From Macrostomum hystrix (lineage: Eukaryota; Animalia; Platyhelminthes), in NCBI GenBank assembly GCA_950097015.1, contig CATNEN010000005.1, positions 3,224,001-3,288,000 on the forward strand: 64,000 nt of DNA, read 5' to 3'. A model generated the notes under the pieces. That model saw nothing but the letters and a program-made list of their open reading frames with translations, had not been told where the DNA came from and searched no databases. Positions 1,216 through 21,235 of the stretch are shown here, in pieces. Position 1 is the first letter of the stretch, and every line of letters begins with the position of its first letter. The position numbers were made by a program, and so were the translations under genes.

Positions 1216-1821
1216 TTGAGCATTTTGGTGTATTATTTGTGTTTAATACAACATTGTAAAGAACTTTTGCCCTGACACAATGATCGGCCATTATACCGAT
1301 TTTTATTTTTTTAGCAGGAATATTTGATCTGATGTTTGAAAGTTGAAACAAATTAAATTTAAATGCCTAAAATGCCTAATGCCTACTCGCCTCATAATTC
1401 TTATCTATTTGTCTCTTTCTATTTTCTTATCTCACTGTCCCTCAGCACGCTTAATAGATTTACATCATACTCTCTGCCCTATCAGTTCACCCACCTAATC
1501 TCTCCTCCATTAAAAAAAGTGTGAAATAATGGCCGCTCAAAAGTGTGTGTTGATTAGGCCGTAAAATTGTGTTAAATTAGTGGAGACTGAAAAAGGAAAC
1601 TGTTTCTTGAATATTAGCCCGGTTTTGTTAGGCGAGAATCTTATTAATTTTTGCCAATCGCGTCAACCCTGCGCACTCACTCTTCTGGGTTGATAATAAA
1701 CATTTGTTAACTGTTTTAATTCAGCCCCCTTCTATAAACTCAATAAATATATATAATATATAAATATATAAATTTTTTTATAAATTTATTATATATTTAT
1801 TTATAATTATAATTATATTTA

Positions 1822-2154
1822 TGTTGTGGGTTTCGTTACGATAATTCCGTAAATAGTTTTCTAGAACTTTCTACCACTTGTTATAACACTCTGTTGTTTC
1901 CAGAATCTTCTCTGCGCCTCCCCCGCGGGCTATCTATGAGAACTTTCTAGAAAGTTCTCCCACTCGCTCCCCAGGCTATAAATAGAAACCCCCGCGCGGT
2001 GCACACACTCAAGAACCTTTCCAGTATTTAATAATACTGCTGTTACAAATATACGCTTATCCAGTCGACTGCCGAGTGCTCCTTTCGGCGCTATACTTAC
2101 ATTTACCGACACTACAATTGGAATCTCTGTATTCGTTACTTCAAGAATACAACA
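1822..2154 (+). repeat. 5' LTR
   Basis: 333-bp direct repeat of 6559-6891 with TG...CA termini and TATAAATA at 1977-1984. Confidence 0.97.
1858..1984 (+). promoter_or_regulatory. Three heat-shock elements (nGAAn inverted arrays) plus TATA box in LTR U3
   Basis: tTTCt-aGAAc-tTTCt at 1858-1872; tTTCc-aGAAt-cTTCt at 1897-1911; aGAAc-tTTCt-aGAAa-gTTCt at 1939-1958; TATAAATA at 1977. The same sites recur at +4737 in the 3' LTR. Confidence 0.8.
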
Positions 2155-2163
2155 GGGATTTTC

Positions 2164-2181
2164 TGGCGTCGCAAGCAGGAT
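2164..2181 (+). other. Primer binding site, tRNA-Ser-like
   Basis: TGGCGTCGCAAGCAGGAT has the form of the complement of a tRNA-Ser 3' end (...AUCCUGYUYGYGACGCCA). It lies 9 nt downstream of the LTR end. Confidence 0.7.
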
Positions 2182-2253
2182 CTTGATCAACTTCGAGGAC
2201 GTCTAATCTACAACGACTGTCACTATTGACCGAAGGATCAAGCTACTACAATC

Positions 2254-5200
2254 ATGCCCGAAACGATGCAAGACGAGGATATAATCAGCCTCCTACGGCA
2301 GCAGATGGAAGAAGAGCGCCAACAGCGGAACGCTGACCGGCAGATGATGCTCGACCTCATTCGGTCTCTAAAGCCTGCAGCGGACCAGTCCCAGGCTGCA
2401 GCTTTGCCGACGCATGTGACGACGTCGACTCCGAGTTTCTCGCCATTCGACGCCACGTCCGAGCTCTGGCCCGACTACTTGGCCAGATTCTGCACCTTCA
2501 CGGGCGCGAACTCCATACCCGACGACAAGAAGGCTCAGGTGTTCCTGACGAACCAGTCTCCGTCTGTCTACAAGCTTCTCTCAAACTTGGCAGCGCAGCA
2601 GACGCCGCGGAAGGAGATCAACACGCTCACTATGGACGAGATTGAGAAGTTCATGGAAGAACAGTATGACACCAAGCGCTTCATCGTGCGGGAGCGTTTC
2701 CGGTTCTGGAGCGACATGCGGCGGAAACCGGGTGAGACGATCCAGGAACTGGCTGCGAGAATCCGCCAGGATGCAACCACCTGCGATTTCTCTTCCATCA
2801 AAGATCCACTGGACGAGGCGCTGCGCACGCGTTTCATCTGCTCAGTGAGGAACGAAGCAATACTCAAAGCTTTGTTCAAATTAAAGGTGGAAGAGCTCAC
2901 GTTCGCCCGGGCTGTCGAGATCGCCATCGAGACAGAGGAAGCCGCCCGAGTCGCCAAGGAGACGGTTTACGGCGACAAATCCAGCCCCGTTAACAAGGTT
3001 AAGCAGAAGGTTCGGCGACCCGGAGCCACTTCGGCGAAATTTACGACAGATTCTACTGCTTCCAGGTCTACTACTGACTCTGCGTCTGGTTCGTGCTACC
3101 GCTGCGGAGCGAAGAACCATCGGGCAAACGATTGCCGATTCAAAGACGCGACCTGCCGGCACTGCAAAAAGGTGGGTCACCTAGAATCTGTCTGCCGTTC
3201 CAAGGCCAAAGGATCTGCCCCTGCGGCGAACTTCAAGAAGCCAGTGAAACAGGTCGAGGAGCATGTGCTTGTACATGCTGTAGCCCGAACCGAGGACGAC
3301 CTGCCTAAGCTGGAAGTGTCGATCCACATCCAAGGCAAGGCTCTCGCCATCGAGGTCGACACTGCGACAAACGGCAACTTCATCACAGAGTCATTCTGGA
3401 AGAAGCTGGGGACGCCGCCGCTCGAAGTAGCGATGTCACGCTACGAGTCCGCCAGCCGACACGACTTACCTGTACTAGGTACCTTCGTCGGGAAAACGAC
3501 ATTGCCTGGCTCAGCTCATGAGCACGACATCCAGTACATCGTCACACAGGTGCCCGGCTTGAATCTACTCGGCCGGACCGCCACGAAGCTGTTGGGAATC
3601 TCCGTCGACAAACTGCTCGGCGCTGCCAGCGCCATTCAAGAAGTCAACGCAGTGTTTGACCACCTGTCGCCGGACGAGGCTCTTCAAAAGGCCTGCCGAA
3701 ATCTTTGCGACGAATTCCCGGACCTGTGGAAGGACGAGCTGGGTTGCCTCAAGGACTTCAAGCTCGAGTTGCAGTTTAACCCGGATGCAAAGCCGGTGTT
3801 CCGGAAGGCTAGGCCTGTCCCCTTCGCCATCCGCGAGGAGCTCGAGCGCGCCTACGACGAGGGCATCAGGAGAGGCATCTGGGAGCCTACTGACTTCAAT
3901 GACTACGGGACGCCCGTGGTCCCCGTGCGAAAGCCCTCGACCGGCTCAGAGCAGCCGAAACTGCGAGTCTGCGGAGACTACTCGTGCACTATCAACCCGC
4001 AGCTGGAAGACAACCGTCACCCGCTGCCCCTCCCAGAGGAACTGCTACAGAAGCTGGGAGGCAGCTACTGCTTCTCAAAGGTAGATCTGGCCGACGCCTA
4101 CAACCAGATCGAGTTGGGACCGATGAGTCAGAGGCGCCTGGCACTGAGCACCCACCGGGGTGTGCTTCTTCAGAAGCGGCTCGCTTTCGGCCCGAAGTCT
4201 GCAGTGGGTGAGTTCCAGTTCATCATGGAAATGGTAGCCGGTGATCTGCCCGGAGTCGTTTTCTACTTGGACGACTACCTGGTCGGCGGCGCGACCGCTG
4301 ATGAGCATCTCGCAAACCTACGCCGGCTTTTCCAACGCCTTTCTGACAAGGGACTTCGCTGCCGACGGGAGAAGTGCAAATTCGCCATGCCCAGCATCGA
4401 GTACCTTGGCTATGTACTGTCGAAAGAAGGCATCGCCAAGGGAACCAAGGTGGACGCTGTCCGCGAAATGCCTCCACCAAAGGACGTGTCCAGCCTCCGG
4501 TCATTCCTCGGCTCGGTCCAGTTCTACGCGAAGTTTCTGCCGCCAAGCATGGCCACGATCTCCGAGCCGCTGTACCGGCTCACCAGGAGGGACACACCGT
4601 GGACCTGGAAAGACGCAGAGCAGCGGGCCTTCGACCAGATCAAGGAGGAGCTCTCGTCGGACAACGTGCTGGTCCACTACAATGCCGACCTCCCTCTCGG
4701 GCTCTCCTGCGACGCATGGATCCAACGTCGGGATCTGCGCCGTCCTGTTCCACCGCTACCCGGATGGTAGCGAGCGGCCGATCGCCAACGCTTCAAAGTC
4801 TCTGACGGATGCTCAGCGCCGCTATCCTCAGATTCAGAAGGAAGCCCTTTCAATCATCTTCGGCCTAAAGAAGTTTTTCCAATACTTGTTCAACCGCAAG
4901 TTCATCCTGGTCACGGACCATAAGCCGTTGATTTCTCTATTCGGGCCCGAGAAGGAGACACCAGTGATGGCGGCAAACCGGCTGGCACGGTGGGCTAACC
5001 TGCTCCACAACTTCAACTACGAAGTCGAGTACCGCCAGACCAAGAGTCACGGAAACGCGGATGCCCTGAGTCGCCTGCCAATGGGAGACGACCCAGATTT
5101 CGACGGGGAGGAGAGCGCAGCCGACTTCGACACGGTCTGCGCGATCAAGGTCCTAAGCTTGCAAATCCAGCCGGCTGACGCCTCAGCCGTGGCCAAAGAA

Positions 5201-6520
5201 TCATCGAGGGACCCGGTGATCTCCACCGTCATGCGCTACTGTCGAGAAGGATGGCCACCAGACAGGCGAGACGAAGACGCCGAGGTGGCCCGCTTACGGA
5301 AGGTCAAAGATTCGCTCTCCTGCGGCAACGGGTGTCTTCTGCATGGCTGTCGTCTTGTGATTCCTCGGAACCTCCGGAATGAGGTGCTGAAGATTCTCCA
5401 CCTCGGACACTTTGGAATACAGAGGATGAAGCAGCTGGCTCGATCGGCAGTCTACTGGCCGAACATCGACGACGACGTCGAGCACCTGTGCCACGGCTGC
5501 CACAGCTGTGCTGAGCACCAAAATCATCCGCCAAAGGCCGCCGTCCATCCGTGGATGATGCCTGAGAAGCCTTGGAGTCGCCTACATCTGGATCACGCAG
5601 TCAACTTCCTCGGCACCAACTGGCTAGTGCTCACGGACGCCTACTCGAAGTACCCGTGCATACACTCGACGCAATCCATGTCAACGCGGGCAACGATCGA
5701 GCTTCTGGAAGAAGACTTTGCCCACTTCGGCTACCCTCACGCCATCGTCACTGACAATGCAGCGGCATTCATGGCTGAGGAGTTTCAAGCTTGGTGTCGC
5801 GAACACGGCATCGCGCACCTCACAGGAGCTCCGTATCATCCTGCAACAAACGGAGCGGCCGAACGACTGGTTCAGACCTTCAAGAAGGCCCTGAAGAAAT
5901 CCAGCCTGCCACCTGCCAGGGCGCTACAGCAGTTCCTGATGCAGTACCGACGGACTCCTGCGGTCAACGGCTACTCTCCGAGCGAACTCCTTAATGGCCG
6001 GCAGATCAGGACACAGATTGATACTCTGCTGCCATCTCCAGCCCATCTCGCCCAGGATCGCCAAGTCAAGCAGGCCGAAGAGTCCAGAGCTCGGAAAAAG
6101 TTGTCTCGCGTCCGAGAAGGCTACAACGTCGGAGATCCGGTCTACGCTCGCTACTACGGACCACGCCGCGAGAAGGAAGGCCGCTGGGTTCCGGCAGTGG
6201 TCACCAAGCGGCACGGCAGCCGCAGCGTCAACGTCAAGGTTGTCCCAAGCGGCCCGGTGTGGCGACGGCACTTCGACCAGCTTCAACCGCGACACGTGTC
6301 CGCGGAAGACAGCGAGCCAGGATCACTGCCGACTCAACAAAACGAAACGGCCGGCCACCTGATGCTGCCGGCCACACCAGCGGTGGCACATCCAGGATCT
6401 CGACCCAGGCCTCCAGGATGGCGAGCGCCGGACCAAGTCCAACACCCGCCGCCCTACGGACCAGATAATCCACGACGGTCGGCTAGGCAGCGAAAGCCAC
6501 GGCTACAAATGGACTTATAG
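2254..6520 (+). CDS. Gag-Pol polyprotein (two CCHC knuckles, protease, RT, RNase H, integrase), broken by a 4-bp insertion at 4717-4720
   Basis: CYRCGAKNHRANDC and CRHCKKVGHLESVC knuckles; protease VDTA; RT FYLDD; RNase H ...IQKEALSIIFG...TDHKPL; integrase HHCC and D(LDHA)-D(TDN)-E(AAER). Removing TGGA gives a single 1420-aa ORF and restores CDASNVG. Confidence 0.93.
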
Positions 6521-6558
6521 ACTTTCTATCAGCTGTACTCACAGTTTTGGTGGGGAGG

Positions 6559-6891
6559 TGTTGTGGGTTTCGTTACGATAATTCCGTAAATAGTTTTCTA
6601 GAACTTTCTACCACTTGTTATAACACTCTGTTGTTTCCAGAATCTTCTCTGCGCCTCCCCCGCGGGCTATCTATGAGAACTTTCTAGAAAGTTCTCCCAC
6701 TCGCTCCCCAGGCTATAAATAGAAACCCCCGCGCGGTGCACACACTCAAGAACCTTTCCAGTATTTAATAATACTGCTGTTACAAATATACGCTTATCCA
6801 GTCGACTGCCGAGTGCTCCTTTCGGCGCTATACTTACATTTACCGACACTACAATTGGAATCTCTGTATTCGTTACTTCAAGAATACAACA
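6559..6891 (+). repeat. 3' LTR
   Basis: Copy of 1822-2154, preceded by the PPT ggggagg and followed by the TSD attta. Confidence 0.97.
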
Positions 6892-7799
6892 ATTTATATA
6901 ATTATAATTATGTATATATATTTATATAATATATATATATATATATTATTTAATTTATTCAAGCTCAAAGTGAACTAATTCAGGCACATTCATCTATGCT
7001 TCTATATGCCGAATGGCAAGCAAAACAATCCATTTTAATTGTAACACATAACAACAACAAATAATGATCTTTATTTGAGTTACAATGAGTATACCATCGC
7101 ATGCAAACGTTGTTTGTCAAATTACATTCTATAACATTAAATTATACTGTCAAAATAATTAGATACTCAACTTTTGACAATGTTTTATTTCGTCATTAGA
7201 AGTATGGAATTGCACTTCTGGGATATAATTCAGTCCTTTTAACCTTAGCATTAGCTCTTCTTATGAAATCTATCAATTTAGTTATAGTATACGTGGGTAG
7301 CAATCAGAGACATTGGCAGCAGATTGAACGACACGAAGTAGACACTGAAGCTAAGATTGATCGCAATAGATCTATAGAACATCAATAGAAGCGCTAATAA
7401 AATAGGATAGCCAACGTGGTATACAACCACCGACGACGGTGCAATGTACCAATCGTGTAGAAACAGCTGCAGCTTGTTGTCCTTCGACAGGAGGTTGCGT
7501 CGCTCGTTGATGTGCTCGGCGAAGCCCTGCGAATTATGGACCAATGACGGTCAGGATTTCGAATAATTAGTGGCTTTATTAAGTAAGGAATATCAATACA
7601 ATCAATATATCAATCATTTAAGAATTCACTTGACATCCAATATCTGCTCCGGACATAGTTTTTGTTTGAGCACTACAGGGAATTAAGACTGTTTATCAAG
7701 GACACAAATTATATCCACTCCGCTAGAAGACCAAGAAGCCAGCGACCAAGATAAAATTTGAGAATTTGTTTGGACTGACCAACTACTATGCGCTCTACA

Positions 7800-8185: not shown

Positions 8186-8709
8186 CAGGGGTCGGCAAAC
8201 TCCGGCCCGCGGGCCAGATGCGGCCCTCGAAGCCCCTAAATCTGGCCCGTTGCCCCTTCCACCACCTATAGTATCCTATCTCATCTCTCCAGTGTCTTAT
8301 CTGTCCTGTGTCTAATTATCTCTCCCCTGTCTCATCTCTGCCGTGTCTCCCGTCTCTCTCCAGTCTTATCTATTCTCATCTCTGGCTCATCCCTCCCCTG
8401 TCTCGTCTATCCGGTGTCTCATCTCTCCCATTTCTCATCTATCCTGTGTCCAATCTCTCCCATTTCTCATCTCTCCCATTTCTCATCTCTCCCATTTCTC
8501 ATCTCTCCCATTTCTCATCTCTCCCATTTCTCATCTCTCCCATTTCTCATCTCTCCCATTTCTCATCTCTCCCATTTCTCATCTCTCCCATTTCTCATCT
8601 ATCCTGTGTCTCATCTCTCCCCTTTCTCATATTCCTACAGTTAATACGGCCCGCTGTCGTCCTATAGGTTCTCTCCGTGGCCCGCTCGCTAAAAAGTTGC
8701 CGGCCCCTG
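8186..8709. mobile_element. Non-autonomous hAT-Charlie (MER58-like) MITE with an internal satellite
   Basis: TIRs CAGGGGTCGGCAAACT and AGTTGCCGGCCCCTG; perfect 8-bp TSD GTTTAGAA at 8178-8185 and 8710-8717; GGCCC-rich subterminal motifs; no transposase. Confidence 0.92.
8270..8632 (+). repeat. 16-bp satellite array (tctcatctctcccatt) inside the MITE
   Basis: Tandem 16-bp units, nearly perfect at 8450-8600. Confidence 0.9.
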
Positions 8710-15008: not shown

Positions 15009-15752
15009 TCAATAGCCAAAAACAGTTTGTTGAACAGTTCCGGCTATTCTGCCAGCTCTGGCTCTCCTTTGACGAGTCTTAATGTTGTCCTTCCTCAGCG
15101 ATAGCGGCCGGTTTACCTGCGTGCGGTGCGTCATAATAATCCGAGTGAGTGGCCTAATTCCCTGACTGTTCAGTGGCCTAATCCCCTCAGTATCCTTATC
15201 CCTATCCTAATCCCTTCAGTATCCTTATCCCTATCATAATCCCTTCAGTATCCTTATCCATATCCTAATCCCTTCAGTATCCTTATCCCTATCCTAATCC
15301 CTTCAGTATTCTAATCCCTATCCTAATCCCTTCAGTATCCTTATCCCTATCCTAATCCCTTCAGTATCCTTATCCCTATCCTAATCCCTTCAGTATCCTT
15401 ATCCCCATCTTAATCCCTTCAGTATCCTTATCCCTATCCTAATCCCTTCAGTATCCTTATCCCCATCTTAATCCCTTCAGTATCCTTATCCCTATCCTAA
15501 TCCCCAAGTATCATAATCTCCTCAGTATCCTAAGGTAGGTTATTAGGTACCCGTTGTACCTTATCCCTCAGTATCCTAATCCCTTCAGTATTATAATCCT
15601 TCTGTATCCTAATCCTCTCACTGCTCAATGTACTTTATCTCAGAAACTCACGGAATGCAGTTTGTAGTACAATCCGCAGGCATTACAAACGGGGGTACCA
15701 GTCACTGCGTCCCTTCTCCACAATGTGGTTTCTGAAGTGCCACAGTTGGTGC

Positions 15753-15846
<94 letters not shown>

Positions 15847-18433
15847 GTAATAATCTGGCTGTGTCCAATGATGCTGCTGCTGTTGCACACTATTCCCATT
15901 GTAGTTTATCTGTGTTTAAAATTTATTCAAATGAAACAGGTTATTTTAGCCTCCTGAATACATTTCTAATGACATCCATTTCTAAATTTATAGATAAATA
16001 GAAATATGAAACGACACTCTTTGTTAACTCTTTGTTAATAAATTCCTCTATACAAATCAAAGCCCTTTTCGCCAAGCTAGCTATTTGCTTGCACGCGCTT
16101 AAAACGGAAAATTTTCAGATGTTGTCGGACAGAATCAAAGAAAAAAAAACAATAGTTTTTATATGTTGCGGCAATTTTATCATTTTTTTCTATACGCGGC
16201 GGTAGGTGGAGAAGTAAGGGACGCGGGGTGTTCAAGTGTCCTCAAACATGATTGCACCTACAATATACTGCTGCCACTACAGAAAAATAACAAATTACAT
16301 TTCAAACTAACTCACCTCCAAATCTTCTACGCAACCTCTGACCATAGGCTTTGGCTGTTCAAACTCGTCCAGAACTTGATGGGCTGTGACAGTGTGAGAC
16401 TGCTCAGCCATCCATGAATCTGCAAGGAATTATTAAATCAGCTATCACTTATTTGATATCAATCCGAACTTCTTTATTATCCCACCAATCTCTGTCTAAC
16501 AGTTTTAACGGCATTCTACCCCCTGTCTGACTGTTTTTAACCTGCCATTCTACCCCCTGTCTGACTGTTTTAACCTGCCATTCTACCCCCTGTCTGACTG
16601 TTTTTAACCTGCCATTCTACCCCCTGTCTGACTGTTTTAACCTGCCATTCTACCCCCTGTCTGACTGTTTTAACCTGCCATTCTACCCCCTGTCTGACTG
16701 TTTTAACCTACCATTCTACCCCCTGTCTGACTGTTTTAACCTACCATTCTACCCCCTGTCTGACTGTTTTAACCTACCATTCTACCCCCTGTCTGACTGT
16801 TTTAACCTACCATTCTACCCCCTGTCTGACTGTTTTAACCTACCATTCTACCCCCTGTCTGACTGTTTTAACCTACCATTCTACCCCCTGTCTGACAGTT
16901 TTAACCTGCCATTCTACCCCCTGTCTGACTGTTTTTAACCTGCCATTCTACCCCCTGTCTGACTGTTTTAACCTGCCATTCTACCCCCTGTCTGACTGTT
17001 TTAACCTGCCATTCTACCCCCTGTCTGACTGTTTTAACCTACCATTCTATCCCCTGTCTGACTGTTTTAACCTACCATTCTACCCCTTGTCTGACTGTTT
17101 TTAACCTGCCATTCTACCCCCTTTCTGACTGTTTTAACCTGCCATTCTACCCCCCGTCTGACTGTTTTAACCTACCATTCTACCCCCTGTCTGACTGTTT
17201 TTAACCTGCCATTCTACCCCCTGTCTGACTGTTTTAACCTGCACCATTCTACCCCCTGTCTGACTGTTTTAACCTGTCATTCTACCCCCTGTCTGACTGT
17301 TTTAACCTACCATTCTACCCCCTGTCTGACTGTTTTAACCTACCATTCTACCCCCTGACTGACTGTTTTAACCTGCCATTCTACCCCCTGTCTGACTGTT
17401 TTAACCTGCCATTCTGTCTGACTGTTTAACTTTCTCAGACCCGTTGTACCTCTATGCCTTGTTTATATAAAATGTAGAATAGCTAAGCAAATAAATATAT
17501 TTGAGTGACTTATCTTATTCTTTAGAATTTGGAAGCCCTTCTCCTAATTTTAACTAGCTGTAGCTACAGTAATTCATGAGCAACTTTAGCACGTGCAAGC
17601 CATACTCGGGACATTAAAATTAGAGCTCAAGATAAGATTAGAATATTTGCATTGCTTCTCGGCCCGAAAATAAATGGCCTTAGTATGGCTTGGCTCTGTA
17701 TTCCCATTTTTTTACTAAAATTGGATGCTCTTTTAGTTATCAGGCGCAGTTTGGTAGATAGAATCCCCAGTTGTTAGATAATGCCTAGTCTTCTAAACTG
17801 TTCGACAATATGTTCTATAAACTGTTAGACAATGTGTTCTATAAACTGTTAGATAATGTGTTCTATAAACTGTTAGACAATGTGTTCTATAAACTGTTAG
17901 ACAATGTGTTCTATAAACTGTTAGACAATGTGTTCTATAAACTGTTAGACAATGTGTTCTATAAACTGTTAGACAATGTGTTCTATAAACTGTTAGACAA
18001 TGTGTTCTATAAACTGTTTGACAATGTGTTCTATAAACTGTTAGACAATATGTTCTATAAACTGTTAGACAATGTCAGCCAACTCACACGCAGAGTTGGC
18101 ACAGTCAACAGGCTCTGTAATCGCTGCAGGCAGGTCGTTGGTGAGGCTCCAATCCTGCATGCAGGCAGCTGATTGCTGACCAATCTGGCTGTCGGGCCAG
18201 CTGCTGGAAGAAGCCGACGATGCCGACGGGTGCCAGCTGGTAGAGCCATCGGTGTTGTACATGCAGTCGCACAGGCTGCCGTTGACACTGCAGCCATAAT
18301 CGATACTCACTACTGACTGCGGCAGTGGTTGATGCGCGTTCGACTTGAAATCTTCTCCGTGAGCCTCAGGAGTAGCGTAGAACTGCCAACTACCATCTTG
18401 ATAGGCCTGTTGCGCCTGCTGATCCGTTGCCAT
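15009..18433 (-). CDS. Single-finger GATA transcription factor (GATA-A), complement join(18088..18433,16316..16419,15652..15909,15009..15116), 271 aa
   Basis: GT-AG introns with consistent phases 1, 0, 0. Finger [34 protein letters not shown] followed across the conserved phase-0 intron by [18 protein letters not shown]. The start is the first in-frame ATG after an upstream stop; a probable non-coding exon donor lies at 18803. Confidence 0.85.
15170..15620 (+). repeat. 29-bp minisatellite in GATA-A intron 3
   Basis: Tandem aatcccttcagtatccttatccctatcct units. Confidence 0.9.
15754..15843 (-). repeat. Pure (CAG)30 coding trinucleotide repeat
   Basis: Uninterrupted CTG run on the + strand, encoding Q30 just before the zinc finger. 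Confidence 0.95.
16500..17430 (+). repeat. 33/34-bp minisatellite in GATA-A intron 1
   Basis: Tandem ccattctaccccctgtctgactgttttaacctg units. Confidence 0.95.
17795..18075 (+). repeat. 24-bp minisatellite in GATA-A intron 1
   Basis: Tandem aatgtgttctataaactgttagac units, ending 12 nt from the splice donor. Confidence 0.95.
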
Positions 18434-18757: not shown

Positions 18758-19339
18758 CACACAGAGTATGAACTAGTATGAACTAGCAAGTCACAATTCT
18801 TACCTGATCGACAGCCGGTGACCTCTGCTCCATCTCCAGGACCCACTCCGCTAACTCGCTGAATTCGTGCTCCTCGCGATCTTCATTTTGAACAGTCGTG
18901 ATGAGATGCATGCTTTACCGGTTGATATTCTCGACTTAATTTTTTTACTCTTTAGATCAGCGTCCAGCCGGTGAGCTCGGTGGGAAATAGAACTATTTTT
19001 TATCTGCAACGCTTCTCAACCACCCACCGCCACCCCTCGAAGCCCGCTCTGGTTTGCTGGACAGAGCGCAGCGATTGCTATTGGCTGGCCAATCGGCGAG
19101 CTCAAAGCTCACCGGCCTAATGCCAGCACTCAGCCCTGGTCCCTGACCCACAGTTCCAAGGGACACCGCCTCCCTATGGGAATTAGGCATGCAACTCTTG
19201 GTATAGAAGCTGGAAAAACAACTGCCTGTGTTTTATTCAAGTGCTAGTAAAGTAGATACACGTTGCATTAGTAGTAATTGGTTTTGTTCTGTGTGAGAGT
19301 CGGCAATAACTATATCAGTTGAATTTCTTGGGCAGAAAA

Positions 19340-21235
19340 GGAGGCTGAGACAGTGATGAAGGGGTTAGAATAGGAGGCTGAGACAGTGATGAAGGGGTTA
19401 GAATAGGAGGCTGAGACAGTGATGAAGGGGTTAGAATAAGAGCCTGAGACAGTGATGAAGGGGTTAGAATAGGAGGCTGAGACAGTGATGAAGGGGTTAG
19501 AATAGGAGGCTGAGACAGTGATGAAGGGGTTAGATTAAGAGGATGAGACAGTGATGAAGGGGTTAGATTAAGAGGCTGAGACAGTGATGAAGGGGTTAGA
19601 TTAAGAGGATGAGACAGTGATGAAGGGGTTAGATTAAGAGGCTGAGACAGTGATGAAGGGGTTAGAATAGGAGGCTGAGACAGTGATGAAGGGGTTAGAA
19701 TAAGAGCCTGAGACAGTGATGAAGGGGTTAGAATAGGAGGCTGAGACAGTGATGAAGGGGTTAGATTAAGAGGATGAGACAGTGATGAAGGGGTTAGATT
19801 AAGAGGCTGAGACAGTGATGAAGGGGTTAGATTAAGAGGATGAGACAGTGATGAAGGGGTTAGATTAAGAGGCTGAGACAGTGATGAAGGGGTTAGATTA
19901 AGAGGCTGAGACAGTGATGAAGGGGTTAGATTAAGAGGCTGAGACAGTGATGAAGGGGTTAGATTAAGAGGCTGAGACAGTGATGAAGGGGGTAGAATAG
20001 GAGGCTGAGACAGTGATGAAGGGGTTAGAATAAGAGGATGAGACAGTGATGAAGGGGTTAGAATAAGAGGCTGAGACAGTGATGAAGGGGTTAGAATAAG
20101 AGGATGAGACAGTGATGAAGGGGTTAGAATAAGAGCCTGAGACAGTGATGAAGGGGTTAGAATAAGAGGATGAGACAGTGATGAAGGGGTTGGATTAAGA
20201 GGATGAGACAGTGATGAAGGGGTTAGATTAAGAGGCTGAGACAGTGATGAAGGGGTTAGATTAAGAGGATGAGACAGTGATGAAGGGGTTAGATTAAGAG
20301 GCTGAGACAGTGATGAAGGGGTTAGATTAAGAGGCTGAGACAGTGATGAAGGGGTTAGATTAAGAGGCTGAGACAGTGATGAAGGGGTTAGATTAAGAGG
20401 CTGAGACAGTGATGAAGGGGGTATAGAATGGGAGGCTGAGACAGTGATGAAGAGGTTAGAATAAGAGGATGAGACAGTGATGAAGGGGTTAGATTAAGAG
20501 GCTGAGACAGTGATGAAGGGGTTAGATTAAGAGGATGAGACAGTGATGAAGGGGGGTATAGAATGGGAGGCTGAGACAGTGATGAAGGGGTTAGAATAAG
20601 AGGATGAGACAGTGATGAAGGGGTTAGAATAAGAGGCTGAGACAGTGATGAAGGGGTTAGAATAAGAGGATGAGACAGTGATGAAGGGGTTAGAATAGGA
20701 GGCTGAGACTGTGATGAAGGGGGGTAGAATGGAAGGCTGAGACAATGATGAAGGTGGGTAGAATGGGAGGCTGAGACAGTGATGAAGGTGGGTAGAATGG
20801 GAGGCTGAGACAGTGATGAAGGGGGTAGAATGGGAGGCTGAGACAATGATGAAGGTGGGTAGAATGGGAGGCTGAGACAGTGATGAAGGTGGGTAGAATG
20901 GGAGGCTGAGACAGTGATGAAGGTGGGTAGAATGGGAGGCTGAGACAGTGATGAAGGTGGGTAGAATGGGAGGCTGAGACAGTGATGAAGGTGGGTAGAA
21001 TGGGAGGCTGAGACAGTGATGAAGGTGGGTAGAATGGGAGGCTGAGACAATGATGAAGGGGGTAGAATGGGAGGCTGAGACAATGATGAAGGGGGTAGAA
21101 AGTGATGAAGGTGGTTAGAATGGGAGGCTGAGACAGTGATGAAGTGGTTAGAATGGGAGGCTGAGACTGTGATGAAGGGGGTAGAATGGGAGGCTGAGAC
21201 ACTGATGAAAGGGAGGCTGAGACAGTGATGAAGGT
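19340..21235 (+). repeat. 33-bp minisatellite (gaggctgagacagtgatgaaggggttagaatag)
   Basis: About 57 units, with sequence variants changing in blocks along the array. Confidence 0.95.

What the first reader, a model, noticed from the sequence alone, without database searches (positions are those of the whole stretch)
1858..1984. Animal Gypsy retrotransposon whose LTR is built like a heat-shock gene promoter
Seen: U3 holds three separate perfect alternating nGAAn arrays (3, 3 and 4 units) about 40 bp apart. The proximal array is a perfect 22-bp palindrome (gagaactttctagaaagttctc, 1938-1959), and the HSE ends 18 nt before TATAAATA. Known: HSF1 trimers bind three or more inverted nGAAn units, this architecture typifies hsp70 promoters, and an HSE-driven retrotransposon is established in plants (the Copia element ONSEN). 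Inference: this Mag-clade element is HSF-inducible and mobilises under heat or proteotoxic stress. Identical LTRs show it moved very recently.
Basis: partly seen in the sequence, partly recalled or inferred. Interest (0 to 1): 0.85.

Follow-up and report, generated by a model that had tools for sequence, protein, structure and literature searches.

The report
Heat-shock-promoter LTR retrotransposon in flatworm
A young, multi-copy Gypsy-type retrotransposon of a Macrostomum flatworm carries ten perfect heat-shock-factor binding units in its promoter, laid out like the host's own hsp70 promoters; a 2025 paper proved this kind of element in the sister species M. lignano, so this is a new member, not a new kind.

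Summary
The element spans window 1822-6891, with identical 333-bp LTRs and a 5-bp target duplication. Its U3 holds three perfect nGAAn arrays of 3, 3 and 4 units. The last is a 22-bp palindrome ending 18 nt before TATAAATA. Shuffles never reach this density.

Assembly figures and protein identities mark the genome as Macrostomum hystrix. Four intronless host hsp70 genes show the same 3+3+4 layout, with the 4-unit array next to the TATA box. They share only the motifs with the LTR, so this is mimicry rather than promoter capture.

Two further repeat families in this genome also carry perfect arrays. One is a Gypsy family only 27-32% identical in protein (3+4+3 units). The other is a non-coding repeat (5 units).

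At least 20 full-length copies and 6 solo LTRs exist. Half of the LTR pairs are identical.

Ustyantsev et al. 2025 showed in M. lignano that Mag, CsRN1 and Gmr1 LTR elements acquired such arrays, are induced more than 250-fold by heat, and lose induction when the arrays are mutated. Heat induction and heat-driven mobilisation were not tested here.

The scan had already noted similar modules elsewhere in this genome. Verdict: new member of a known kind.

The parts
1817..1821 (+). 5' target-site duplication ATTTA
   Evidence: The same 5 letters follow the 3' LTR at 6892-6896. All 22 pairs in the genome have such 5-bp duplications.
1822..2154 (+). 5' LTR, 333 bp, TGTTG...CAACA termini
   Evidence: 100% identical to 6559-6891.
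1858..1872 (+). Distal HSE, 3 perfect alternating units (TTC-GAA-TTC)
   Evidence: TTTTCTAGAACTTTCT matches 16 of 16 letters of the reverse strand of a distal HSE upstream of host hsp70.
1897..1911 (+). Middle HSE, 3 perfect units
1939..1958 (+). Proximal HSE, 4 perfect units, inside the 22-bp palindrome 1938-1959
   Evidence: At least 50 exact copies of the 18-nt core in the genome.
1977..1984 (+). TATAAATA box
   Evidence: It lies 18 nt after the proximal HSE; host hsp70 has TATAAAA 13 nt after its 4-unit HSE.
2013..2016 (+). Most polymorphic patch of the LTR (indels, several alleles); inferred U3/R boundary and transcription start
   Evidence: Alignment of 52 LTRs. The patch lies 29-32 nt after the last base of the TATA box (36-39 nt after its first base). 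That it marks the start site is an inference.
2163..2180 (+). Primer-binding-site-like TGGCGTCGCAAGCAGG, 8 nt after the LTR
   Evidence: A similar TGGCG... follows the LTR in family 2 and in relative L084. The primer tRNA was not identified (one search found no tRNA in the window).
2254..4770 (+). Open frame 1: gag (CCHC zinc knuckles), protease region, reverse transcriptase, start of RNase H
   Evidence: Pfam zf-CCHC, RVT_1, and RT_RNaseH_2 positions 1-37.
4716..4720 (+). Frame break inside the RNase H domain, private to this copy
   Evidence: The Pfam RNase H model is split between two frames at about 4717. Segment 4640-4800 is 161 nt here and 157-158 nt in the 25 other genomic copies. Contigs of two public runs show the same 4-letter length difference.
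4718..6520 (+). Open frame 2: rest of RNase H, integrase zinc finger and core
   Evidence: Pfam RT_RNaseH, Integrase_H2C2, rve.
6549..6558 (+). Polypurine tract GGTGGGGAGG
   Evidence: The same motif stands before the LTR of relatives L084 and L085.
6559..6891 (+). 3' LTR carrying the same three HSE arrays (6595-6609, 6634-6648, 6676-6695) and TATA box (6714-6721)
6892..6896 (+). 3' target-site duplication ATTTA

Best explanation
Window 1822-6891 is one copy of a very young Ty3/Gypsy (Mag-like, single gag-pol frame) LTR retrotransposon family of a Macrostomum flatworm, by the assembly figures M. hystrix. Its U3 is a compact heat-shock promoter: ten perfect nGAAn units in three arrays (3+3+4), then a TATA box. 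Host HSF trimers most likely bind these arrays on heat or proteotoxic stress and recruit RNA polymerase II. The genomic RNA would then start about 30 nt after the TATA box, near the hypervariable patch at 2013-2016. Shown here: the anatomy, the statistics, the match to the host hsp70 layout, the recurrence in unrelated repeat families, and the recent amplification. Shown by others in a congener: such arrays are necessary for heat induction of a Mag LTR. Inferred only: HSF binding and heat induction in this family, and any link between heat and new insertions. The window copy has a broken frame and could move only with proteins from sister copies.
For: Arrays and their statistics. Element anatomy. 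Host HSF: five HSF DNA-binding-domain matches in the genome, including a 413-aa open frame. All four intronless hsp70 genes carry arrays of 3, 3 and 4 units, with the 4-unit array 13 nt before TATAAAA. A second Gypsy family (L069:1842-5851, 257-bp LTRs, only 27-32% protein identity) has 3+4+3 units, then TATAAATA 20 nt later. A third, non-coding repeat has a 5-unit array. Perfect 4-unit sites number 163 genome-wide against 24 for the reversed control; 38 of the first 50 listed lie in these three families. 38 of 40 LTRs chosen without regard to the arrays keep all ten units. Recent activity: 11 of 22 LTR pairs identical, all with 5-bp duplications, and at least 6 solo LTRs. Experiment in a congener: PMC12801592 reports four HSE-bearing LTR families induced more than 250-fold at 37 C, and mutation of the HSEs of Mlig-id115|Mag (three HSEs) abolished reporter induction.
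Against: There are no expression data for this family. No run on record as RNA holds it. Seventeen RNA-guessed runs under one species label hold almost none of its words; that fits silence at normal temperature but proves nothing. Core positions do not vary significantly less than other LTR positions (1 of 30 against 21 of 303 variable sites, p = 0.7); the copies are too alike for the test to have power. The M. lignano paper found two Copia families with one HSE each that were not induced, so arrays alone are not sufficient. That paper saw no reporter signal in the gonads, so germline mobilisation by heat is unproven even there. The closest outside relative (L084, 73% protein identity) has no array in its LTR, so the arrays are a recent gain without long conservation.
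Confidence: 0.75

Rival explanations
1. The arrays bind HSF, but they mainly serve developmental or tissue-specific expression rather than the acute heat response. One of the several HSF paralogues, for example in embryos, stem cells or gametogenesis, would drive the element.
For: The genome has five HSF DNA-binding-domain matches, unusually many for an invertebrate. In M. lignano the LTR reporter was active in embryos and blastema and absent from gonads. To spread in the germline the element needs expression in germline or stem cells.
Against: The layout copies the heat-inducible intronless hsp70 genes. In M. lignano induction was strictly heat-dependent.
Confidence: 0.12
2. The U3 is a captured piece of a host heat-shock gene promoter, acquired by recombination or template switching, rather than motifs that arose within the LTR.
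For: The unit counts are the same (3+3+4), and there is a 16-nt exact match to a distal hsp70 HSE.
Against: Similarity stops at the motif edges. No spacer, TATA context or flank aligns. Array spacing is 39 and 42 nt in the LTR against 66-81 nt at hsp70. The shared non-core letters (TTCTAGAA) recur in all the HSE-bearing families and so look like the host HSF's preferred site.
Confidence: 0.05
3. The arrays are silent passengers. They are present and perfect only because the family is too young to have decayed. Transcription is driven by other U3 elements or blocked by silencing.
For: All copies are 98.5-100% alike, so perfection within the family is uninformative. No RNA holder was found.
Against: Chance cannot produce the arrays. 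The same solution appears in a family with only 27-32% protein identity and in a non-coding repeat. The M. lignano mutagenesis shows that such arrays are functional.
Confidence: 0.08

Closest known systems
Mlig-id115|Mag and the other HSE-containing Ty3/Mdg4 LTR retrotransposons of Macrostomum lignano (Ustyantsev et al., Mob DNA 2025, PMC12801592; preprint 10.1101/2024.12.18.629116)
   Same: Same host genus and same superfamily. Canonical HSEs stand upstream of a TATA box in the LTR, and Mlig-id115 has three HSEs. Copy number is about 20. Several unrelated families in one genome carry HSEs.
   Different: The host species differs: its HSF is only 55% identical to the best M. lignano HSF. No sequence of the M. 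lignano families was on hand, so orthology is unknown. Heat induction and HSE necessity were shown there and not here.
ONSEN / ATCOPIA78 of Arabidopsis and related Brassicaceae COPIA families (PMC3907296, PMC5059998)
   Same: An LTR retrotransposon whose LTR carries HSF-binding HSEs and uses the host heat response. The trait evolved repeatedly in related families.
   Different: ONSEN is Ty1/Copia in plants, bound by HsfA2, and heat-induced transposition was shown there in silencing mutants. Here the element is Ty3/Gypsy in a flatworm, the arrays are more numerous and perfect (ten units), and mobility under heat is untested.
Helitron-borne HSEs in Caenorhabditis (Garrigues et al., eLife 2019, PMC6927752)
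   Same: A large share of the genome's strong HSEs sits in transposable elements, which could spread HSF-responsive modules near host genes.
   Different: Those are rolling-circle DNA transposons. Here there are two LTR families and one unclassified non-coding repeat. Effects on neighbouring genes were not examined here.
Host intronless hsp70 promoters (G000 contig 33; loci L057-L060)
   Same: Three arrays of 3, 3 and 4 perfect units, with the 4-unit array next to the TATA box, and a shared TTCTAGAA core.
   Different: Spacing is wider at hsp70 (66-81 nt against 39-42 nt). There is no sequence homology outside the motifs.

Membership tests
Ty3/Gypsy (Ty3/Mdg4, Metaviridae) LTR retrotransposon | Direct LTRs with TG...CA ends, a target-site duplication, and a PBS and PPT next to the LTRs | tested here: met
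   333-bp identical LTRs, TGTTG...CAACA ends, 5-bp ATTTA duplication, PPT GGTGGGGAGG, PBS-like TGGCG....
Ty3/Gypsy (Ty3/Mdg4, Metaviridae) LTR retrotransposon | Domain order gag - protease - RT - RNase H - integrase | tested here: met
   Pfam zf-CCHC, RVT_1, RT_RNaseH(_2), Integrase_H2C2 and rve, in that order. The protease did not reach the Pfam threshold in this copy; it aligns to the protease region of family 2.
Mag clade of Ty3/Gypsy | RT/RNase H/integrase phylogeny places the element with Mag, SURL and Jule reference elements | not testable with these tools
   No named reference sequences were available. The best named hits are labelled 'K02A2.6-like' or 'Tf2-6 polyprotein' from marine invertebrates at 53-67% identity. 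The paper states that most M. lignano LTR elements are Mag. This is indirect only.
Mag clade of Ty3/Gypsy | gag and pol in one reading frame, no chromodomain | tested here: inconclusive
   gag through RT run in one frame, 2254-4770. The only break is the private one at about 4717. No chromodomain hit.
HSE-driven, heat-activated LTR retrotransposons (ONSEN type; M. lignano HSE families) | Canonical HSEs (at least three alternating nGAAn units) in U3, upstream of the TATA box and start site | tested here: met
   Three arrays of 3, 3 and 4 units; TATAAATA follows 18 nt later.
HSE-driven, heat-activated LTR retrotransposons (ONSEN type; M. lignano HSE families) | Strong transcriptional induction by heat | not testable with these tools
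   No heat-shock RNA run was available. No listed holder is on record as RNA, and contigs cannot show expression level or start site.
HSE-driven, heat-activated LTR retrotransposons (ONSEN type; M. lignano HSE families) | Induction depends on intact HSEs or on HSF | not testable with these tools
   Needs a reporter assay or HSF knock-down. It was shown only for Mlig-id115 in M. lignano.
HSE-driven, heat-activated LTR retrotransposons (ONSEN type; M. lignano HSE families) | GAA/TTC cores conserved above the background of the LTR across family members | tested here: inconclusive
   1 of 30 core sites against 21 of 303 other sites vary among 40 LTRs (p = 0.7). 38 of 40 LTRs keep all ten units. 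Copies are 98.5-100% alike, so power is low.

The most novel reading that the evidence does not exclude
HSE capture by mobile elements is a genus-wide, recurrent process in Macrostomum. In M. hystrix, three unrelated repeat families have placed well over a hundred hsp70-grade HSF modules around the genome. The LTR converged on the exact 3+3+4 grammar of the host hsp70 promoter. Some solo LTRs now drive host genes; an earlier scan note reports the same module in front of a GTPase gene. If so, these elements both exploit and rewire the heat-shock regulon of a non-polyploid flatworm, in which heat-driven transposition could be measured directly.
Probability: 0.3. Interest if true: 0.6.

Novelty: new member of a known kind. 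Interest (0 to 1): 0.42.

Why it matters
HSE-driven LTR retrotransposons were proved first in plants (ONSEN) and, in 2025, in one animal, Macrostomum lignano. Finding the same design in M. hystrix, a divergent congener, suggests the strategy is widespread or recurrent in the genus. Here it appears in at least two Gypsy families with under 32% protein identity and in a non-coding repeat, and it copies the unit grammar of the host hsp70 promoters. M. hystrix has a compact assembly without the redundancy of the M. lignano one, and this family has about 20 near-identical copies. That makes it a cleaner system for the question the M. lignano work left open: does heat-induced transcription lead to heritable new insertions? 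Three quarters of the first 50 listed perfect 4-unit HSE sites lie in repeats. This raises the possibility, as with Caenorhabditis Helitrons, that mobile elements shape the host heat-shock regulon.

Tried and rejected
1. Conservation of the GAA cores among copies: 52 LTRs were aligned, but they are 98.5-100% alike, so the test has no power.

For the same reason no complete sister copy could be read for its open frame.

3. RNA evidence: no run on record as RNA holds the element. The four runs laid were contigs, which cannot show start site, strand or level.

4. Captured hsp70 promoter: rejected, because similarity is confined to the motifs.

5. Direct comparison with the M. lignano families: no supplementary files or sequences are held for the paper.

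6. Exact look-ups of host hsp70, HSF and the family 2 protein found nothing.

7. The organism behind assembly GCA_006844795.1 (relative L085, which has a 4-unit HSE) was not found in the paper library.

8. Primer tRNA: no tRNA gene in the window.

9. Family 3 could not be classified: no open frame of 150 aa or more in the roughly 9 kb around its HSE; the only one in the 17.5 kb read (399 aa, opposite strand) lies about 8 kb downstream.

Full report
OBSERVATION

There are three arrays of perfectly alternating nGAAn/nTTCn units:
- 1858-1872, 3 units
- 1897-1911, 3 units
- 1939-1958, 4 units

The stretch 1938-1959 is a perfect 22-bp palindrome. TATAAATA lies at 1977-1984, 18 nt after the last unit. 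The three-unit pattern occurs 8 times in the 64-kb window, always inside the two LTRs. About 0.9 matches are expected, and 100 shuffles gave at most 4-6. Shuffling the LTR alone 20,000 times with dinucleotides preserved gave no match in 99.7% of cases and never more than 2, against 4 observed. The arrays are not a chance product of composition.

THE ELEMENT

The arrays lie in U3 of a full-length LTR retrotransposon, window 1822-6891.
- The LTRs (1822-2154 and 6559-6891) are 333 bp, 100% identical, and end in TGTTG...CAACA.
- They are flanked by a 5-bp duplication, ATTTA.
- A polypurine tract, GGTGGGGAGG, precedes the 3' LTR. A PBS-like TGGCGTCGCAAGC follows the 5' LTR.
- Pfam finds CCHC zinc knuckles, reverse transcriptase, RNase H, and the integrase zinc finger and core, in the Ty3/Gypsy order.

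The RNase H model is split between two reading frames at about 4717, so this copy is broken. The break is private to it. Segment 4640-4800 is 161 nt here and 157-158 nt in all 25 other genomic copies. Contigs of two public runs show the same 4-letter length difference. I built no consensus and no mended version, and I name no copy as intact.

THE FAMILY

The genome has 220,453,370 bases in 42 contigs. It holds at least 64 LTR candidates, and the 40 that were scored are 98-100% identical to the window's LTR. The 18-nt core of the proximal array occurs at least 50 times exactly.
- Of 22 LTR pairs, 11 are identical, 5 differ at one position, and all have perfect 5-bp duplications. Two pairs look like assembly duplicates.
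- At least 6 solo LTRs with duplications exist.

The claim of very recent movement therefore holds, and it holds for the whole family.

The most polymorphic patch of the LTR is 2013-2016, 29-32 nt after the last base of the TATA box (36-39 nt after its first base). I read it as the U3/R boundary, that is, the transcription start. This is an inference.

THE HOST

An intronless hsp70 gene of this genome is 95% identical to Macrostomum lignano Hsp70; the next best hit is 84%. One host HSF is only 55% identical to the best M. lignano HSF. The assembly figures, about 220 Mb in 42 contigs, are those published for Macrostomum hystrix (PMC10468722). I take the host to be M. hystrix.

HOW THE U3 COMPARES WITH HOST PROMOTERS

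The genome encodes five HSF DNA-binding domains and four intronless hsp70 genes. Each of the four hsp70 promoters has arrays of 3, 3 and 4 perfect units, with the 4-unit array 13 nt before TATAAAA. The LTR has the same unit grammar in a more compact form. Its array starts are 39 and 42 nt apart, against 66-81 nt at hsp70.

Similarity between the LTR and the hsp70 promoters is confined to the motifs. The best match is 16 nt, TTTTCTAGAACTTTCT, and no spacer or flank aligns. This is mimicry of the host's preferred sites, not capture of a promoter.

RECURRENCE IN OTHER REPEAT FAMILIES

Perfect 4-unit sites (GAAnnTTCnnGAAnnTTC) number 163 genome-wide, against 24 for the reversed control. Of the first 50 sites listed, 18 belong to this family, 15 to a second repeat, 5 to a third and 12 to other places. 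One of those 12 lies just upstream of an Hsp70-family gene.

Family 2 (for example L069:1842-5851):
- It has 257-bp LTRs with arrays of 3, 4 and 3 units within 67 nt, then TATAAATA 20 nt later.
- It has a single 1151-aa frame with protease, RT, RNase H and the integrase zinc finger.
- Its protein is only 27-32% identical to that of the window's family.
- The LTRs of the two families share only their ends, a short U5 motif, the arrays and the TATA box.

Family 3 is a large non-coding composite repeat. It has a 5-unit array about 70 nt before a TATA-like sequence.

Outside this genome, the closest relative found (73% protein identity, a JGI contig) has no array in its LTR. Another relative (68% protein identity, assembly GCA_006844795.1) has a 4-unit array in its U3. 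The arrays are therefore gained lineage by lineage.

WHAT IS KNOWN

Ustyantsev et al. (Mob DNA 2025, PMC12801592) report the following for M. lignano:
- Ty3/Mdg4 families of the Mag, CsRN1 and Gmr1/Osvaldo clades independently acquired canonical HSEs.
- Four such families rise more than 250-fold after 2 h at 37 C.
- Mutating the HSEs of the Mlig-id115|Mag LTR (three HSEs, 19 copies) abolishes heat induction of a reporter.
- A transgenic line shows ubiquitous heat-induced expression except in the gonads.
- HSF binding and transposition were not shown.

The paper does not mention M. hystrix, and no other paper in the library does so in this context.

MECHANISM AND RIVALS

Most likely (about 0.75): host HSF trimers bind the ten units on stress and drive transcription of the genomic RNA from the LTR.

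Rivals:
- Developmental rather than stress use of one of the several HSF paralogues (0.12).
- Silent passenger motifs (0.08).
- Capture of a host promoter (0.05).

That heat causes new insertions remains unshown, here and in M. lignano.

LIMITS

- Within-family conservation is uninformative: 1 of 30 core sites against 21 of 303 other sites vary, p = 0.7.
- No run on record as RNA holds the element.
- Only contigs could be laid.
- Mag-clade placement was not tested.

VERDICT

The kind is already established in the same genus, so this is a new member of a known kind. Earlier notes of this scan (s1-363635, s1-310538, s1-384938) had flagged similar modules on other pieces of the same genome.

Noticed in passing
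L069:1842-5851 (G000 contig 1, 11588841-11592850); also L070:2009-5522 and a solo copy in L071: A second Gypsy-type family. It has 257-bp LTRs with HSE arrays of 3+4+3 units and TATAAATA 20 nt later. Its single 1151-aa frame lacks an integrase core hit and is only 27-32% identical in protein to the window's family.
   Followed up: partly
L072-L083 (for example G000 contig 1 at 3537105); at least 15 copies on contig 1 alone: A large non-coding composite repeat with internal tandem arrays. It has a perfect 5-unit HSE, AGAACATTCTAGAACATTCTGGAAC, about 70 nt before a TATA-like TATAAAATTATAAA. No open frame of 150 aa or more in the roughly 9 kb around the HSE; one 399-aa frame on the opposite strand lies about 8 kb downstream. 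Its class is unknown.
   Followed up: partly
L057-L060 (G000 contig 33: 3867893-3873260, 4230542, 4642505): Four intronless hsp70 genes, two of them in a divergent pair. Their proximal promoters are nearly identical (3+3+4 HSE units, TATAAAA).
   Followed up: yes
L053-L056 and G000 contig 39 at 10679952: Five HSF DNA-binding-domain matches in one flatworm genome, two of them 18 kb apart on contig 39. The best M. lignano match to one of them is only 55% identical.
   Followed up: partly
L085:2279-2477 (GCA_006844795.1, contig SPJI01001706.1): A 68%-identical relative from an unidentified assembly has a 4-unit HSE, AGAATTTTCCAGAAAGTTCT, in its U3, beside repeated TATAGAAC and TGACGT motifs.
   Followed up: no
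It may be a solo LTR of this family used as a host promoter.
   Followed up: no
window 8337-8656, 15119-15562, 16502-17468, 17746-18123, 19202-19996: Several tandem arrays with periods of 16, 29, 33, 12/24 and 33 nt lie just downstream of the element.
   Followed up: no
G000 contigs 16 and 31, and contigs 35 and 36: Element copies on these contig pairs share the same flanks and target duplications. The short contigs 16 (32 kb) and 36 (124 kb) are probably duplicate haplotype pieces.
   Followed up: partly
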